Part shown: positions 35,011-39,830 of the stretch, one piece after another
How positions within the stretch are numbered: the stretch's first letter is position 1
Layout: each line of letters opens with the position of its first letter
NCBI RefSeq assembly: GCF_030144855.1
Contig: NC_082710.1
Span: 133,362,001 to 133,426,000 of the forward strand
Reading direction: 5' to 3'
Source of the DNA: Hypanus sabinus
Taxonomy: Eukaryota
Length of the DNA: 64,000 nucleotides
Made by a program: the position numbers and the translations under genes
Notes under the pieces: generated by a model
The model's database searches: none
Seen by the model: the letters and a program-made list of their open reading frames with translations, nothing else
Told to the model about the DNA's origin: nothing

Positions 35011-37051
35011 TGTTCAAGAGTCATAGAGAAGTACAGCATAAAAACAGTCCTTTTGGCCAAACTAGTCCATGCCGAAAGCATTTAAGCTGCCTCCTCCCAT
35101 TGACCTGCATGCCCCTACCATCCATGTACCTAACCAAACTTCATTTAAGCATTAAAATTGAGCTCATGTTCACCATTTGTGCTGGCAGCTCATGACACAC
35201 TCTGTATGAAGAAGTTTCATTTCCTCATTTCCCTTCATGTTCCCCTTAGACTTTTCACTATTCACCCTTAACCCATGACCTCTGGTTGTAGTTCCACCCA
35301 ACCTCAATGGAAAAAGCTTGCTTGTATTTACCCTATTTATAACCCTTAAAATTTTGTATTCATCTATAAAATTTCCTCTCAATCTTCTACATTCTAAATA
35401 ATAAAGTCCTAACCTAGTCAACCCTTTCTTATAACTCAGGTTCTCCAAACCAGCAACATCCTTGTAAATTTTCTCTGTACTCTTTCAATCTTATTTACAT
35501 CTCTCCTGAAGGTAGATGATCAAATTTGCACAGCATACTCCAAATTAGGCCTCACTAACATCTTATACAACTTCAACATAACATCCCTTCTCCTGAACTC
35601 AATACATTGCTTTATGAAGGCCACTGTGCCAAAAGCTTTCTTTACAACCCCACATAGCTGTGACACCACTTTCAATGAATTATGGACCTGTATTCCCAGA
35701 CATCTTTGTTCTTCGACATTCCTCAGTGCTCTACCACTCAAAGCGTAAGACCTACCCTGGTTGGCCCTACTGAAGTTCAACACCTTGCACTTGTCTCCAT
35801 TAAATTCCTTTTGCCATTTTCAGCCCAGTTTTCCAGCTGACATGGATCCCTCTGCAAGCCATGACAGTCTTCCTCACTGTCCACTGCACCCCCAATCTTG
35901 GTGTCATCCACAAACTTACTGATCCAGTTAACCGCATTATCATACAGATTGTTGATATAGGTGGAAAACAACAATGGACCCAGTACTGTTCCCTGCAGCA
36001 CAGACTAGTTACAGGCCTCCATTCAGAGAGGCAACCATCTCTGGCCTCTTCAACAAACCCAATGTCTAATCCAATTTACGACCTCATCTTGAATACTGAG
36101 TGAATGAACCTTCTTGAACAACCTGCCATTAGGAGCCTTGTCAAATGCCTTGCTAAAGTCCAGTCACTTTCCTGGTAACTTCCTCAAATGATTGGTTGGA
36201 CATGACCTACCACGCACAAAGTCATGCTGAGTATCCTTAATCAGTCCACGTCTATCTAAATACGCTCATATCCAGTCCCTTAGAATACCTTCTAATAACA
36301 TTCCCACTGATGTCAGACTCACTGCCTATAATTTCCTGGTTTATGTTTAGAGCCTTTCTTCAATCCTCCGGTACCTCTCCTGTCACTAAGGATGATTTAA
36401 ATATCTCTGCCAGGGCCCTGGCAATTCCCGCACTTGCCTCCCATAAGGTCCAAGAGAACAACTTGCCAGGACCTGGGGGTTTGTCCTTCCACATTCGCTT
36501 CACCTCCTCCACTGTATTCTGTACAAGGTCCATGAAGTTGATGCTGCTTTGCCTCACTTATATAGACACTGTGCCCACCTCCTGAGTAAATACAGATTCC
36601 AAAAAAATATTTAAAAGATCTCCCCTTTCTTTTTTGTCTCCATACTTGGATTACCATTCTGATCTTCCTGAGGACCAATTTTATCCCTTGTAATCCTTTT
36701 GCTCTTAACATATCAATAGAATCCGTTAGGATTCTCCTTCACGTTGTCTGCTAGGGCAATTTCATGCCTTCTTTTAGCCCTCCTGATTTTTTTCTTGTAT
36801 TTCCTATATTCTATAAGTACCCTATCTGTTCCTACCTGCCTATACCTGCTCTGCACCTCCTTTTTTCTCTTAACCATGGCTTCAATATCTCTTTAAAACC
36901 AAGGTTCCCCAACACTTGTTATCTTTACCCTCTGTTTAGAGAGGCACATACAAGCTTTGTACTCTCCAAGTCTTGCTTTTGAAGGCCTTCCACTTACCAA
37001 GTACACTTTTACCAGAAAACAGTTGGTCCCAGTTCACATTTGCCAGATCCT

Positions 37052-37175
37052 GACGAAGGGTCTCGGCCTGAAATGTCGACTGTATTTCTTCCTATCGATG
37101 CTGCCTGGCCTGCTGCATTCCACCAGCATTTTGTGTGTGTTGCTTGAATTTCCAGCATCTGCAGATTTCCTCGTG
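37052..37175 (+). mobile_element. Penelope-derived repeat inserted in the CR1, with a hammerhead core at its 5' end
   Basis: Perfect 13-bp TSD TTTGCCAGATCCT (37039-37051 / 37176-37188); CTGACGA at 37050-37056, GAAA at 37070-37073, TC at 37076-37077. Confidence 0.85.
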
Positions 37176-37871
37176 TTTGCCAGATCCTTTCTGATACCAT
37201 CAAAATTGGCCATTCTCCAATCTAGAATCTCAACCCATGGACCAGGCCCATCTTCTGTATATTTACTTTAAAACTATAGTAATGTCATTACGGTCACTAG
37301 ATGCAAAGTGTTCCCCTACACAAGCTTCTGTCACCTGCCCTGTGTCATTGCTCAATAGCAGATCCAGTACTGCACACTCTCTTGTTGGGACTTCTTAATA
37401 CTGATGAAGGAAACTTTCCTGAACACATTTGACAGACTCTATCCTATCTAGTCCTTTGTCAATATGTGGAAAGTTAAAATCACCTACTATCACAATCTTA
37501 TGTTTCTTGCAGCAGTCTTCAATCTCTCTCTGGTTAAATTCCCTGGACTGTTGGGTGGTCTGTAATATAACCCCATTAAAGTGATCATACTTCCCTTATT
37601 TCTCAGTTCCACCCATAATGTCTCACTATACAAGTTCTCCAGGCTCTTCTGGCAGAGCACTACCATGACATTTTCCCTAACGAGTAACTCCACACCTCCT
37701 CCTTTAATCCCTCACACTCTGTCGCATCTAAAGCAATGGAACCCCTGAATACTGAGCTGCCAATCCTGCCCCTCCTACAACCAAGTCTCTCTAATAACTA
37801 AAAAAATCATAACTCCCAATGTTGATCCATGCCATGAGCTCATCCACCTTTCCTATGATACTTTTTGCATT

Positions 37872-37928
37872 CTTCTCCGTGGATTGTCACCTTGTCGTGG
37901 TGGAGAAGCTCGTGTGGTCCTGAGATCC
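37872..37928 (+). ncRNA. HDV-like self-cleaving ribozyme (candidate)
   Basis: P1 CUUCUCC/GGAGAAG (7/7), P3 ACC/GGU, L3 UUGUCGU, P1.1 G37894-C37909 plus U.U, and P2 GGAUU(G)UC/GAGAUCC. P4 is minimal and the J4/2 register is uncertain. Confidence 0.65.
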
Positions 37929-38299
37929 CAAGGGCGATGCTGTCTGGAGCTGTGCTCCTGGTAGGGTCACCCATGGTGGTAAGGTAGAGGGTGAGGTCCC
38001 TGACAAATAACAATCCAACCAAGACCTCAACGGTGGAACAGGCAGATGAAGTTACTTTGAACTCAACGGCTGTGAAAGCGGATGAAGGCTGCAACAAATC
38101 CATCAGCTCCAATCGTTGTGGTTTCCATGCCATTGGAGTCAGTTGGTTGATTTGTGAAGTATCGTGTGCTTTTTGGAGTGCAACAGCAAGTACACATTAA
38201 ACAATACACGCACAGGCGTCTTCGATCTGTGGGCTGCTTCTTCAGAACGAAGACCATCATCCTTGACCTCAAGGGATAGCCATGATGATGATGATGACA
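37872..38299 (+). mobile_element. Non-autonomous RTE-clade (Rex3/Expander-like) short retroposon
   Basis: 12-bp TSD ACTTTTTGCATT (37860-37871 / 38300-38311), (GAT)n tail and RTE-like 5'-UTR motif CCTGGTAGGGTCACCCATGG. It has no tRNA boxes and no coding capacity. Confidence 0.85.
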
Positions 38300-38333
38300 A
38301 CTTTTTGCATTGATATATACACAGCTCAGGACA

Positions 38334-38855
38334 CTAGTCACACCTACTCAACCTTTTGATTCCTGACTTTGTCTGAGGTCTTGCCAACATCTGTCTCCAC
38401 AACCTCTCCACTAACTGTTCTGGCGCTCTGGTTCCCAACCCCCTGCAACTCTTGTTTAAACCCCACCGTGCAGCATTAACAAACCTTCCCACTAGGATGT
38501 TAGTCCCCCTCCATTTCAGGTGCAAACCATCTCTTCTGTACAGGTCCCGCATTCCCTGGAAGAGACTCCAATAATCTAAAAATCTTATGTTCCCCTTCCT
38601 GCAGCAACTCCTTAGCCACGTGTTAAACTGTATAATCCTCTTATTTCTGGCCTCACTAGCACATGGCATGGGTAGCAATCTTGAGATCACAACCCTGGAG
38701 GCCCTGCCCTTTAACTTAGCACCTAACTCCCTGAATCTTTGCAGAACCTCGTCACTCATCCTACCCATGTCAATGGTATCTACATGGACCATGACCTCTA
38801 GTTGTTCACCCTCCCACTTGGACCAATTGGAGATGTCCTGGACCCTGGCACCCAC
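38334..38855 (-). pseudogene. CR1 ORF1 SGNH/GDSL esterase domain
   Basis: HVDTID resembles the HVGTND block; also RVVISRLLP, FNTWL and RDGLHL..G. It lies upstream of the APE start SCVYINAKS. Confidence 0.85.
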
Positions 38856-39149
38856 AAGGCATCATGTCATCCAGGACTCTCTGACTTGTCCACAGAAACT
38901 TCCTGTTTCCCTAAATAATGAATCCCCTATCAGCACTAGTTCCCTCTCCTACCCCCTTCCTTTCTAAGTTACAGAACTGGACTTAGTGCAGAGTCTTTCC
39001 TCTGCCGGGTCACCCCCGGACAGTATCCAAAATGACATACGTGTGGTTGAGGGGAATGTCCACAGGGGTACTCTGCACTGGCTCCTTAACCCATTTCCCC
39101 TTCCTGATTGTCACTTAGTTTTCTGTGTCCTGCACCTTCACGCCCTCAG

Positions 39150-39830
39150 TCTCCCCCAAAAAAAACAGGAAACTTAACAATGAGGAGGAGCCCATCACTT
39201 CCACCTGTCTTCCCCATGTTTCCACAGTTTCTGGAAGGATCCCCAAGATCCTGAAGAAGTACTGGATTAATACCATCCACAGATCTGCAAGGAAGCTCAA
39301 ATCACAGTTTATGTGGTCAAAGATGACCTGGGACTCAGGACAGCTGGTACTTACAGGATTCCCATTCCCTGTGAATGTGGAGCAGCGTATATTGGCCAGA
39401 TGGGGCACATGGTGGAAACCTGCATCATGGAGCACAGAAGATGTATCCATTTGGGTTACCTGAGAAATTGGCTGGAGCAGTTCAATGCATTCACAATGGT
39501 TATTGGATTGATTTTGATGCCACAAAACTACTGTGTTGTGCCAATGGCTTCTGGGATCACCTGATAAAAGAAGCCATTGAAATAAAACCAGAAGAAAAGA
39601 ATTTTATCAAAATGAAAGTCTCACTCTAAGTAAGATCTGGATTATTGTAAACAAGGTGGAACAGTGGAAACTGGATTGGATGAGGACTGACCAGTCAGTA
39701 GGGATGAACAATATCACTGGACTAGTCATGCCCAGGCATCAGCCCTGATGAAGATGGCAGAGTTTGTCATCGAAACATTAGTTAAAATTGATACCTGTAC
39801 CGCAGGAAGTCTGAGAAGAGTTCATTACTT
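39150..39830 (+). mobile_element. Penelope-like element 3' portion: GIY-YIG endonuclease remnant plus hammerhead-bearing terminal repeat
   Basis: AGTYRIPIPCECGAAYIGQMG...MEHRR and LIKEAIEIK; CTGATGA at 39745-39751, stem II GATGGCA/TGTCATC, GAAA at 39772-39775. Confidence 0.85.

What the first reader, a model, noticed from the sequence alone, without database searches (positions are those of the whole stretch)
37872..38299. Ribozyme-headed non-coding retroposon: the TSD-defined 5' end is nucleotide 1 of a predicted HDV-like ribozyme
Seen in the sequence: a 428-bp insert sits in a CR1, flanked by a 12-bp TSD (ACTTTTTGCATT) and ending in (GAT)n, with no ORF and no Pol III boxes. Its first 57 nt fit the HDV nested double pseudoknot: P1 CUUCUCC (37872-78) / GGAGAAG (37902-08), P3 ACC/GGU, 7-nt L3 UUGUCGU, P1.1 as one G-C pair plus U.U, P2 GGAUU(G)UC/GAGAUCC, and a very short P4. 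The first base after the TSD is the first base of P1. Established knowledge: HDV-like ribozymes cut immediately 5' of P1; they occur at the 5' ends of R2, RTE and L1Tc/ingi elements; the CPEB3 ribozyme has the same single-pair-plus-U.U P1.1; the L1Tc ribozyme starts with a C-G pair and uses P3 ACC/GGU. Inference: this is a promoter-independent SINE-like family (comparable to R2 SIDEs or trypanosome NARTc/RIME) that cuts itself out of host read-through transcripts and borrows RTE machinery. I know of no description of such a family in cartilaginous fish. The catalytic J4/2 (C37919 or C37920, followed by UGA) is the weakest part of the model.
Basis: partly seen in the sequence, partly recalled or inferred. 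Interest (0 to 1): 0.9.

Follow-up and report, generated by a model that had tools for sequence, protein, structure and literature searches.

The report
Ribozyme-headed short RTE-derived retroposon
A 428-base jumping-gene copy in this cartilaginous-fish genome is a cut-down version of an RTE-type LINE. Its first 57 bases form a small, widely conserved RNA knot of the HDV self-cutting type, so the element most likely trims itself out of longer transcripts; this mechanism is known from other retrotransposons.

Summary
Window 37872-38299 is a 428-bp insert with a perfect 12-bp target-site duplication and an (ATG/GAT)n tail. It has no tRNA-like head and no Rfam match.

The interpretation also holds as far as computation can show.
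- I recovered 10 related copies from other elasmobranch-type assemblies and metagenomes, and 29 more distant relatives.
- Homology always begins at nucleotide 1 of P1, next to unrelated flanks.
- In four other organisms, 68-107 contigs per run break exactly at 37872.
- Across 28 unique sequences, P1 (93% paired, 3-4 pair types per column) and the P2 core carry compensatory changes. P3 is 96% paired and nearly invariant. L3 keeps the HDV signature U..CG, G23-C38 is invariant, and C49 (37920) is invariant, four bases before the P2 3' strand.

A near full-length 3.9-kb LINE with one endonuclease plus reverse-transcriptase reading frame (RTE-like) shares both ends with the insert. That makes the insert an internal-deletion (SIDE/NARTc-like) derivative.

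Self-cleavage is untested. HDV-like ribozymes at RTE 5' ends are already published, so this is a new member of a known kind. First readers of this scan flagged other HDV-like RTE heads in this genome; I did not check those notes.

The parts
37860..37871 (.). Left copy of the 12-bp target-site duplication ACTTTTTGCATT
   Evidence: empty-site paralogs
37872..38299 (+). 428-bp non-coding retroposon: an internal-deletion derivative of an RTE-like LINE
37872..37878 (+). P1 5' strand (nt 1-7, CUUCUCC). Nt 1 is the first base after the TSD and the predicted cleavage product end
   Evidence: 7/7 Watson-Crick pairs with 37902-37908; compensatory changes at pairs 1/37, 2/36, 3/35 and 5/33
37881..37885 (+). 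P2 5' strand core (nt 10-14, GGAUU)
   Evidence: pairs with 37924-37928; A-U to U-A in L008, U.G to C-G in L005/L008/L023/L026, GGUC/GACC in L021/L022/L027
37886..37888 (+). Conserved G-Y-C between P2 and P3 (nt 15-17). Pairing with 51-52 occurs only in this subfamily
37889..37891 (+). P3 5' strand (nt 18-20, ACC)
   Evidence: 96% paired with 37899-37901 in 28 sequences; nearly invariant, partly because the search pattern fixed it
37892..37898 (+). L3 (nt 21-27, UUGUCGU). U21, C25 and G26 correspond to HDV U20, C24 and G25. G23 (and U22) form the P1.1 side
   Evidence: HDV descriptor features from PMC6326823
37899..37901 (+). P3 3' strand (nt 28-30, GGU)
37902..37908 (+). P1 3' strand (nt 31-37, GGAGAAG)
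37909..37910 (+). P1.1 partner (C38 pairs with G23, invariant; U39 faces U22, and the pair becomes U-A only in L007)
37911..37919 (+). 9-nt linker in place of P4 (nt 40-48). This copy has C at 37911 where the family consensus is T
   Evidence: (37911 C>T in 85-99% of depth)
37920..37920 (+). Invariant cytosine C49, the candidate general acid (HDV C75 equivalent). Three variable nt (37921-37923) follow, then the P2 3' strand
   Evidence: invariant in 28/28 unique sequences, whereas 37919 varies
37924..37928 (+). P2 3' strand core (nt 53-57, GAUCC)
   Evidence: The L021/L022/L027 lineage loses all homology right after this strand, which marks the module boundary
37929..37995 (+). Second conserved structured domain of the 5' UTR (nt about 58-125), a branched fold with covarying hairpins
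   Evidence: (A3): 8 of 16 pairs with double changes
37872..38223 (+). Segment derived from the first ~350-365 nt of the LINE 5' UTR
   Evidence: blastn against L009 (10-352 to 10-365) and against L003, L004, L008
38224..38299 (+). Segment derived from the last ~80 nt of the LINE (end of ORF, 3' UTR, tail)
   Evidence: alignment with the 3' ends of L009, L003, L002, L040 and L007
38261..38274 (+). 3' hairpin CCUUG-ACCU-CAAGG, the counterpart of the LINE's ACUCG-UUU-CGAGU; likely the reverse-transcriptase recognition stem
   Evidence: both arms change together between this copy and the LINEs
38282..38297 (+). (ATG/GAT)n microsatellite tail
   Evidence: the same tail is on L002, L003, L007, L009 and L040
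38300..38311 (.). Right copy of the TSD
38337..38855 (-). Host LINE ORF1 fragment (GDSL-esterase-like) into which the element inserted

Best explanation
The insert is a short non-autonomous retroposon made by internal deletion of an RTE-like LINE. That LINE is about 3.9 kb, has a single ORF encoding an AP-endonuclease and a reverse transcriptase, and ends in a 3' hairpin plus a (GAT)n tail. The insert keeps the first ~350 nt of the LINE's 5' UTR and its last ~80 nt.

Nucleotides 1-57 fold as a minimal HDV-like nested double pseudoknot without P4:
- P1: 1-7 with 31-37
- P2: 10-14 with 53-57
- P3: 18-20 with 28-30
- L3: UUGUCGU
- P1.1: one pair, G23-C38
- C49 sits four bases before the P2 3' strand.

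Inferred mechanism. The element has no promoter of its own and is transcribed as part of longer host or neighbouring transcripts. The ribozyme cuts just 5' of C1 (between window 37871 and 37872), which releases an RNA whose 5' end is exactly the element's first base. The RTE protein supplied in trans recognises the 3' hairpin and tail, nicks an AT-rich target and copies the RNA by target-primed reverse transcription, which creates the TSD.

Shown here: the anatomy, the fixed 5' end, helix covariation, the invariant core, and an autonomous relative that shares both ends. Inferred: catalysis, read-through transcription and trans-mobilisation.
For: - Fixed 5' end. Ten related copies from other assemblies and metagenomes, and most of 29 distant relatives (a few are 5'-truncated or off-type), start homology at P1 nt 1, beside unrelated flanks. 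In four other organisms, 87/68/107/101 contigs have loose ends before 37872 and 50/44/77/56 before 37871. The upstream consensus agrees at only 0.34-0.39, and depth steps up about tenfold at 37872.
- TSDs on other copies: L003, L007, L009.
- Covariation in 28 unique sequences. P1 is 93% paired (pair 2/36: UA 14, CG 8, UG 4, AU 1; pair 5/33: AU 12, UA 6, CG 5). P3 is 96% paired. The P2 core is 76% paired against at most 58% when slid.
- Tool counts. A1: 83.7% paired against at most 55.7% slid; 14 double-change cells against 5.5 in shuffles (0 of 500 shuffles reach it). A2: 87.7% against at most 59.6%.
- Core. L3 has U1, C5 and G6, G23-C38 is invariant and C49 is invariant. These fit the published HDV descriptor elements U19/C23/G24 and the catalytic C (PMC6326823).
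- Module boundary. The L021/L022/L027 lineage shares only nt 1 to about 57.
- Descriptor null. The only hit in the window is at 37872; about 8e-7 of random positions match.
- Autonomous partner. L009 has the head, then an EN (Exo_endo_phos_2, below Pfam's cut-off) and RT (RVT_1) ORF, then the same 3' hairpin and tail. Its homologues are single-ORF proteins of about 1050 aa on 3.5-4.3-kb contigs.
- Deletion series: 428 bp (window), about 440 bp (L007), 2.1 kb (L003), 2.67 kb (L002).
- Precedents. HDV-like ribozymes at RTE 5' ends (Ruminski 2011, as cited in PMC3774820). L1TcRz is active with a one-pair P1.1 and a C at +1, and NARTc shares it (PMC3185411). R2 SIDEs (PMC3414825).
Against: - No cleavage assay and no 5'-end-resolved RNA data. 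The RNA-run contigs (X19) both span and start near the junction, so they are uninformative.
- Several canonical HDV features are missing. The first pair is C1-G37 rather than G1.U37. P1.1 has one flipped G-C pair plus a U.U. J4/2 is C-N-R-U/A rather than C-R-R-A. P4 is absent. Three conserved nucleotides separate P2 from P3.
- No Rfam HDV-like model matches.
- P2 covariation is modest, and its register differs between lineages.
- The 29 distant sequences were fetched with a pattern that fixed P3, L3 and part of the linker, so conservation of those parts among them is partly circular. P1 5', five bases of the P1 3' strand and both P2 strands were free.
- This particular copy carries U40C next to P1.1; the effect is unknown.
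- An intact relative (L040) has a different 5' head, so the ribozyme is not obligatory for the lineage.
Confidence: 0.75

Rival explanations
1. The conserved 5' pseudoknot is a structured but non-catalytic RNA or DNA element. Candidates are an internal promoter that starts transcription at +1, a binding site for the RTE protein, or part of an IRES-like 5' UTR. On this view the fixed 5' end reflects transcription initiation rather than self-cleavage.
For: No catalysis has been shown. Several canonical HDV residues are missing (G1.U37, the CC/GG P1.1, the RRA of J4/2) (against PMC6326823). No Rfam HDV model matches. A second conserved structured domain follows directly, so the whole 5' UTR is under RNA-level constraint. 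L1Tc shows that a promoter and a ribozyme can occupy the same 77 nt (PMC3185411).
Against: The topology (P2 crossing P1, P3 nested inside P1, one L3-to-J pair), the U..CG in L3 and an invariant C exactly four nt before the P2 3' strand are what catalysis by the HDV fold requires; a promoter or generic protein site does not predict them. Compensatory changes show selection on RNA pairing. The module is 57 nt and ends at the P2 3' strand in a lineage that shares nothing else.
Confidence: 0.15
2. The head is a ribozyme of another class. The obvious candidate is a truncated twister variant, as reported at the 5' ends of RTE-type Perere-3 elements; on this view the HDV drawing is a coincidence.
For: Twister variants sit at RTE 5' ends in Schistosoma (PMC8501958), and truncated twisters are said to be conserved in RTE elements (PMC7761336). 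The family has a conserved UCCCAAGAGC stretch that superficially resembles the twister L4 sequence GUCCCAAGC.
Against: The strand order differs. Here the CUCC/GGAG helix closes before the CCCAAG stretch, no P4 flanks that stretch, and there is no UAA cleavage loop; Perere-3 elements start with A's whereas these start with C. No Rfam twister, hammerhead, pistol or hatchet model matches. The covarying helices fit the HDV topology.
Confidence: 0.03
3. Chance: an ordinary 5' hairpin of a retroposon that can be drawn as an HDV fold.
For: MFE folding energies of the region are no better than shuffles.
Against: About 8e-7 of random positions match the descriptor, and the only hit in the window is at the TSD boundary. 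There is covariation in two crossing helices, and the 57-nt core is conserved in LINEs whose proteins are only 27-33% identical.
Confidence: 0.02

Closest known systems
HDV-like ribozymes at the 5' ends of RTE-clade LINEs (Ruminski, Webb, Riccitelli & Luptak 2011, J Biol Chem; cited in PMC3774820 and PMC7761336)
   Same: A self-cleaving double pseudoknot forms the first nucleotides of an RTE-type element, the cleavage site is the element's 5' end, and its role is to process read-through transcripts.
   Different: I could not read that paper, so I cannot say whether this exact 57-nt motif is among theirs. Here P4 is absent, the first pair is C-G, P1.1 is one flipped G-C pair, and no Rfam drz/HDV model matches. 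The host is a cartilaginous fish, and the copy studied is a non-coding deletion derivative.
R2 SIDEs (short internally deleted elements; PMC3414825)
   Same: Non-autonomous elements made by internal deletion. They keep the 5' ribozyme and the 3' RT-binding end and rely on the parent's protein.
   Different: SIDEs derive from R2, which has a restriction-like endonuclease and is specific for the 28S rDNA site, where it is co-transcribed by Pol I. This family derives from an APE-type RTE-like LINE that inserts at dispersed AT-rich sites with TSDs.
L1Tc / NARTc with L1TcRz (Trypanosoma cruzi; PMC3185411)
   Same: An autonomous LINE and a short non-autonomous partner share a 5' HDV-like ribozyme. 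P1.1 is a single pair, the first nucleotide is C, the TSD is about 12 bp, and cleavage is at +1.
   Different: L1TcRz is 77 nt with a P4 and doubles as the Pr77 promoter. It belongs to a different LINE clade (ingi/L1Tc) and a different host kingdom.
Twister-variant ribozymes of Perere-3 (RTE clade, Schistosoma mansoni; PMC8501958)
   Same: A ribozyme at the 5' end of an RTE-type element, a TSD abutting the cleavage site, and a microsatellite 3' tail.
   Different: A different ribozyme class and fold. In Perere-3 the TSD contributes the P1 5' strand, whereas here the whole motif lies downstream of the cut.
Rex3 (teleost RTE-clade LINE; PMC6274825)
   Same: An EN-RT-C-terminal single ORF, a very short 3' UTR and a short tandem-repeat tail rich in GAT(G).
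   Different: The Rex3 tail is (GAA)2(GATG)n, three nt after the stop codon. Here about 45 nt of 3' UTR with a hairpin precedes (GAT)n. The overview does not mention a ribozyme for Rex3.

Membership tests
HDV-like self-cleaving ribozyme | Nested double-pseudoknot topology: P1 enclosing P3, P2 crossing P1, and P1.1 between L3 and the strand 3' of P1 | tested here: met
   Pairings are present in the window copy. P1 and P2 are supported by compensatory changes, and P3 is 96% paired.
HDV-like self-cleaving ribozyme | Cleavage immediately 5' of P1 nucleotide 1, so nothing upstream is needed | tested here: inconclusive
   Cleavage itself cannot be tested here. The predicted site coincides with the TSD boundary and with the 5' end of the family in other genomes.
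HDV-like self-cleaving ribozyme | G1.U (G1-Y) pair at the base of P1 (PMC6326823 descriptor) | tested here: not met
   C1-G37 in 23 of 28 sequences, plus G-C 1 and U.G 2. L1TcRz also starts with C and is active (PMC3185411).
HDV-like self-cleaving ribozyme | L3 with conserved U (first), C and G (fifth and sixth), equivalent to HDV U20, C24 and G25 | tested here: met
   L3 is UUGUCGU in the window and in most copies. It is partly fixed by the search pattern for L011-L039, but it is also present in the independently fetched L001-L004 and L006.
HDV-like self-cleaving ribozyme | Two-base-pair P1.1 (C-G, C-G) | tested here: not met
   One invariant pair, G23-C38 (flipped orientation), plus U22/U39, which is unpaired except in L007. 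A single-pair P1.1 is documented in the active L1TcRz (PMC3185411).
HDV-like self-cleaving ribozyme | Catalytic cytosine at the start of J4/2, followed by R-R-A, then the P2 3' strand | tested here: inconclusive
   C49 is invariant and lies exactly four nt before the P2 3' strand (28 of 28). The three following nt are UGA here but NRU in most relatives, so R-R-A is not kept.
HDV-like self-cleaving ribozyme | P4 helix | tested here: not met
   Only a 9-nt linker (7 nt in L021/L022/L027), with at most one possible pair. From my own knowledge, P4 is dispensable for HDV catalysis.
HDV-like self-cleaving ribozyme | Match to a curated covariance model (Rfam HDV, CPEB3, drz families) | tested here: not met
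   No hit at E<=10 in window 36500-39500 or at E<=5 in 12 loci.
HDV-like self-cleaving ribozyme | Mg2+-dependent self-cleavage abolished by mutating the catalytic C | not testable with these tools
   Needs a bench assay.
RTE-type LINE-derived non-autonomous element (SIDE/NARTc-like) | Shares both the 5' end and the 3' end with an autonomous LINE and lacks the ORF | tested here: met
   Insert nt 10-352 matches L009 nt 10-365. The last ~80 nt match the 3' ends of L009, L003, L002 and L040, including the hairpin and (GAT)n. There is no ORF.
RTE-type LINE-derived non-autonomous element (SIDE/NARTc-like) | The partner is an APE-plus-RT single-ORF LINE of about 3-4 kb (RTE architecture) | tested here: met
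   L009 is about 3.92 kb with EN (Exo_endo_phos_2, E=0.0005, below Pfam's cut-off) and RVT_1. The intact relative P0012 has 1063 aa on a 4.26-kb contig.
RTE-type LINE-derived non-autonomous element (SIDE/NARTc-like) | Phylogenetic placement of the RT inside the RTE clade | not tested
   No reference LINE set was available. The assignment rests on architecture, tail type and the homologue list.
RTE-type LINE-derived non-autonomous element (SIDE/NARTc-like) | The short form is itself amplified, not a one-off deletion | tested here: inconclusive
   L007 (another organism) has the same 5'+3' architecture, and contigs of two other organisms span the junction region (records 15, 16, 24). Depth there is only about 5-10% of the 5' part, and contig depth is a poor measure of copy number.
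Classical SINE (Pol III-transcribed) | tRNA-, 5S- or 7SL-derived head with internal Pol III promoter boxes | tested here: not met
   No tRNA; no 5S, 7SL, tRNA or snRNA Rfam match inside the insert.
Twister / T-variant ribozyme | P2 enclosing P4 and L4 (GUCCCAAGC), a UAA cleavage loop, and T1/T2 pseudoknots | tested here: not met
   Strand order is incompatible when compared by eye with Table 1 of PMC8501958. No Rfam twister hit.

The most novel reading that the evidence does not exclude
The 57-nt head is a distinct, P4-less minimal subclass of HDV-like ribozyme (C1-G37, one flipped P1.1 pair, a G-Y-C spacer between P2 and P3, J4/2 = C-N-R-U). It has stayed almost unchanged at the 5' ends of RTE-type LINEs in hosts as distant as elasmobranchs and the unidentified hosts of the JGI/ENA metagenome contigs, while the linked proteins diverged to about 30% identity. 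It behaves as a portable module, present on some lineages, absent from the intact L040 relative, and joined to unrelated downstream sequence in L021/L022/L027. It seeds ribozyme-headed, promoter-less non-autonomous families in many genomes.
Probability: 0.4. Interest if true: 0.6.

Novelty: new member of a known kind. Interest (0 to 1): 0.5.

Why it matters
If the motif cleaves, it would be one of the smallest natural HDV-like ribozymes: 57 nt with no P4. It would show that the requirements usually written into search descriptors (G1.U37, a two-pair CC/GG P1.1, C-R-R-A) are too strict. That would explain why descriptor and Rfam searches miss it.

It also gives a concrete vertebrate example of the SIDE/NARTc strategy outside R2 and trypanosomes. 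Here a LINE sheds its ORF, but the remnant still gets a defined RNA 5' end from any read-through transcript.

For genome annotation, the motif is a precise marker of full-length 5' ends of an abundant elasmobranch repeat family. Because HDV-like ribozymes in RTE elements are already published, the finding extends known biology and does not open a new class.

Tried and rejected
- Rfam scans of the region and of 12 related loci found no ribozyme family.
- MFE folding gave z-scores near 0, as expected for a pseudoknot, so it was uninformative.
- The raw-read DNA run X22 laid only one read; it is evidently not a close relative.
- RNA-run contigs (X19) include one contig crossing the 5' junction and one starting at nt 2. 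De Bruijn contigs break at repeat borders anyway, so this is no evidence about RNA ends.
- Variant tables from read laying could not give linked covariation, because position 2 variants are soft-clipped.
- Ruminski 2011 (PMC3308841) and Webb 2009 (PMC3159031) are not held, so their RTE ribozyme sequences could not be compared.
- A full-text search for the core sequence found only an unrelated primer.
- The viral contigs pattern scan returned 0 hits.
- P0002 had no contig on record.
- Alternative models rejected:
  - A large ribozyme with the conserved hairpin at nt 71-92 as P4 and the P2 3' strand near nt 95. Rejected because L021/L022/L027 share only nt 1 to about 57, and L008/L005 covariation fits the 53-57 strand.
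  - P2 directly abutting P3 (GYC with 53-55). This fits coral-type sequences but fails in L002, L003, L008 and L022.
  - A twister-like reading of UCCCAAGAGC has the wrong strand order.
- L013, L033, L028, L031 and L034 are 5'-truncated or degraded. L017 and L037 carry the core in a different context with a poor P1. All seven, and the 76-nt fragment L016, were left out of the covariation counts.
Full report
**Observation.**
The window sequence shows ACTTTTTGCATT at 37860-37871 and again at 38300-38311. These repeats bracket a 428-bp insert (37872-38299) that ends CCATGATGATGATGATGACA. A blastn of the insert against the window finds only itself. The insert is richer in G than its flanks. It contains only short chance ORFs, no tRNA-like sequence and no Rfam family at E<=10.

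The flanks belong to a minus-strand LINE whose ORF1 resembles GDSL esterases. Contigs from other organisms laid on the region include paralogous copies of that host repeat that pass from ...CCTAYGAT directly into a single ACTTTTTGCATT (joints). These are empty sites, so the insertion and its TSD are real.

**Fetching relatives.**
The window holds one copy, so I translated an antisense ORF that overlaps the insert's 5' part and searched protein collections with it. The contigs encoding the hits gave ten loci, L001-L010, each with one copy of the family. They come from four NCBI assemblies, four Logan assemblies, a human-gut metagenome (probably dietary fish DNA) and a marine metagenome.

A pattern drawn from the conserved core was then scanned over metagenome contigs and returned 29 further loci, L011-L039. 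That pattern fixed P3, L3 and part of the linker. It left the P1 5' strand, five bases of the P1 3' strand and both P2 strands free.

**The 5' end is fixed at P1 nucleotide 1.**
In the copies with an intact 5' end, homology begins at CTTCTCC or its covarying equivalent (CCTCTCC, GTTCTCC, CTTCACC, CCCCACC, CCTCCCC, CTCTACC...). The preceding DNA is unrelated between independent loci.

Laying Logan contigs of four other organisms on the region gave 87, 68, 107 and 101 contigs with loose ends before 37872, and 50, 44, 77 and 56 before 37871. The loose parts have a median length of 160-255 nt and a consensus agreement of only 0.34-0.39, so they are heterogeneous, AT-rich flanks. Summed depth rises about tenfold at 37872. 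Loose ends inside the host repeat agree at about 0.7, as expected for diverged paralogs.

L003, L007 and L009 carry their own TSDs (GGAAGCCCAG, GTGGGCT, ATTCACATG). L003 has one extra C at the junction, and L009 lacks about two nucleotides.

**Structure.**
Numbering from 37872:
- P1: 1-7 with 31-37
- P2 core: 10-14 with 53-57
- P3: 18-20 with 28-30
- L3: 21-27 (UUGUCGU)
- G23-C38 as the single P1.1 pair, with U22 facing U39
- a 9-nt linker at 40-48
- C49, three variable nucleotides, then the P2 3' strand

I built a structural alignment of 28 unique sequences by hand.

| Element | Result in 28 unique sequences |
|---|---|
| P1 | 93% paired |
| P1 pair 1/37 | CG 23, GC 1, UG 2 |
| P1 pair 2/36 | UA 14, CG 8, UG 4, AU 1 |
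| P1 pair 3/35 | UA 17, CG 6, GC 2, UG 2 |
| P1 pair 5/33 | AU 12, UA 6, CG 5 |
| P3 | 96% paired |
| P2 core | 76% paired, against at most 58% with slid partners |
| G23-C38 and C49 | invariant |
| C48 | varies |

Informative P2 changes include A12-U55 becoming U-A in L008 and U14.G53 becoming C-G in L005, L008, L023 and L026. L021/L022/L027 have a GGUC/GACC helix.

The counting tool gave these results on gap-free sub-alignments.

| Alignment | Sequences | Paired | Paired when slid | Double-change cells |
|---|---|---|---|---|
| A1 | 13 | 83.7% | at most 55.7% | 14, against 5.5 +/- 2.1 in shuffles (0 of 500 reach it); four P1 pairs and one P2 pair have changes on both sides |
| A2 | 9 | 87.7% | at most 59.6% | 3, against 1.3 in shuffles |

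P1 and P2 cross each other, so joint support for both is support for a pseudoknot, not a simple hairpin.

Positions 15-17 are a conserved G-Y-C with no consistent partner. No P4 helix can be drawn in any lineage.

The L021/L022/L027 lineage shares nt 1 to about 57 with the rest and nothing afterwards. This places the module boundary at the P2 3' strand. It also argues against a larger ribozyme that would use the downstream hairpin as P4.

A descriptor built from HDV rules matches only position 37872 on either strand of the window, and about 8e-7 of random positions. I wrote that descriptor after seeing the candidate, so this is only a rough measure.

**Comparison with HDV rules.**
A published descriptor (PMC6326823) fixes G1-Y, two C-G pairs in P1.1, U/C/G in L3, and C-R-R-A in J4/2.
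- Met here: the L3 signature (U21, C25, G26), and a cytosine four nt before the P2 3' strand that is invariant.
- Not met: G1.U (C1-G37 here), the two-pair P1.1, and R-R-A (UGA in this copy, N-R-U in most relatives). P4 is also missing.

L1TcRz is experimentally active with a one-pair P1.1, and its element begins with C (PMC3185411). These departures therefore have precedent, but they keep the catalytic claim an inference.

No Rfam HDV, CPEB3, drz, twister, hammerhead or other ribozyme model matches the window region or 12 relatives.

RTE-type elements of Schistosoma carry twister variants (PMC8501958), and truncated twisters are said to be common in RTEs (PMC7761336). I therefore compared the motif with the twister layout. 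The strand order is incompatible, there is no P4 around the CCCAAG stretch, and the elements do not begin with the A-rich cleavage loop.

**What the element is.**
L009 carries a near full-length LINE of about 3.92 kb. From 5' to 3' it has the 57-nt head, about 690 nt of 5' UTR, and one reading frame (three disruptions) with an AP-endonuclease (Exo_endo_phos_2, below Pfam's cut-off) and a reverse transcriptase (RVT_1). This is followed by about 45 nt of 3' UTR with a hairpin (ACUCG-UUU-CGAGU) and a (GAT)n tail.

Its homologues are single-ORF proteins of about 1050-1060 aa on 3.5-4.3-kb contigs from teleosts, Anolis, amphioxus and arthropods. This is RTE-like architecture. I did not build a tree. 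The teleost RTE Rex3 has a related (GATG)n tail (PMC6274825).

The relatives form a deletion series:
- L003 is a 2.1-kb derivative that lacks the RT.
- L002 is 2.67 kb: 160 nt of head joined to the RT part.
- The window insert and L007 (about 440 bp, another organism, 63% identical) keep only about 350-385 nt of the 5' UTR and about 80 nt of the 3' end. The 3' part starts within the last codons of the ORF.

The 3' hairpin covaries between the window copy (CCUUG-ACCU-CAAGG) and the LINEs.

Contigs from two other organisms span the 5'/3' junction region (records 15, 16, 24), so the short form is not unique to this genome. Its depth there is a small fraction of the 5' part.

**Wider distribution.**
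In L011, L012, L015, L028, L031 and L032, an endonuclease ORF only 27-33% identical to the shark-type protein starts about 345 nt downstream of the head. The 57-nt core is nevertheless nearly identical. Other metagenome loci carry the head without any ORF. The intact relative L040 (a 1063-aa ORF with the same 3' hairpin and tail) has a different 5' terminal 400 nt without the motif. The head thus behaves as a module.

Immediately downstream (nt about 58-125) lies a second conserved domain, a branched fold in which 8 of 16 predicted pairs show double changes. Its role is unknown; a translation-initiation or protein-binding element is a reasonable guess.

**Mechanism and confidence.**
The best-supported reading is the following. 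The element has no promoter of its own and is read through from outside. The head self-cleaves 5' of C37872, and the RTE protein acts in trans on the 3' hairpin and tail to insert the RNA by target-primed reverse transcription.

The anatomy, the fixed 5' end, the covariation and the autonomous relative are shown. Cleavage, read-through transcription and trans-mobilisation are inferred. I put 0.75 on this reading as a whole. My estimates for the separate parts are:
- RTE-derived deletion element: about 0.95
- HDV-type pseudoknot: about 0.85
- actual cleavage at the predicted bond: about 0.75

The main rival, at 0.15, is a conserved non-catalytic 5' structure or promoter.

**Novelty.**
HDV-like ribozymes at RTE 5' ends are published (Ruminski 2011, via PMC3774820), and so are ribozyme-headed deletion derivatives. 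Full-text searches found nothing on sharks or on this sequence, but the key paper could not be read. First readers of this scan have flagged several other HDV-like heads on RTE-derived elements elsewhere in this genome; I did not check those notes. I classify the finding as a new member of a known kind, with a moderately interesting minimal ribozyme variant attached.

Noticed in passing
window 37929-37995 (nt about 58-125 of the element); alignment A3: A second conserved RNA domain lies directly after the ribozyme. It is a branched fold with two hairpins and a closing stem, and 8 of 16 predicted pairs show compensatory changes between shark-type and metagenome sequences. Function unknown (IRES-like or protein-binding?).
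   Followed up: partly
L040:1-4256: An intact 1063-aa RTE-like ORF has the same 3' hairpin and (GAT)n tail and is flanked by (GT)n. Its first ~400 nt differ completely from the ribozyme head, so 5' heads are exchangeable in this LINE lineage.
   Followed up: partly
L011, L012, L015, L028, L031, L032 (JGI/ENA metagenome contigs): The same 57-nt core heads RTE-like LINEs whose endonuclease is only 27-33% identical to the shark-type protein. The RNA motif is far better conserved than the protein. The host organisms of these contigs were not identified.
   Followed up: partly
L021:894-951, L022:157-214, L027:143-200: This lineage shares only nt 1 to about 57 (with a 2-nt shorter linker and a GGUC/GACC P2) and then continues into unrelated sequence. 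It is a natural 'minimal construct' that marks the ribozyme's 3' boundary.
   Followed up: partly
L017:10505-10533, L037:2089-2117: The 29-nt core pattern occurs in a different context, with a poor P1 complement and unrelated downstream sequence. This may be a decayed or recombined head; unexplained.
   Followed up: no
L001 (ENA human gut metagenome contig) and L005 (marine metagenome contig): Contigs labelled human-gut and marine metagenome carry this family. L001 also carries other repeats that look to me like elasmobranch repeats (from memory, not tested). Dietary or environmental fish DNA assembled into metagenomes is the likely source.
   Followed up: no
window 38337-38855 (minus strand): The host LINE's ORF1 fragment resembles GDSL/SGNH esterases and the OSK domain (below Pfam cut-offs). 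From memory, this is typical of CR1/L2-type ORF1 proteins.
   Followed up: partly
window 37911: This copy has C where 85-99% of family depth in four other organisms has T (nt 40, next to the P1.1 partner). It is the only difference from copy L001 within the 57-nt head.
   Followed up: partly
L003:10286 junction; L009:10103 junction: L003 has one extra C between its TSD and P1 nt 1. L009 lacks about two 5' nucleotides. These are small 5'-junction irregularities of the kind seen in target-primed reverse transcription.
   Followed up: no
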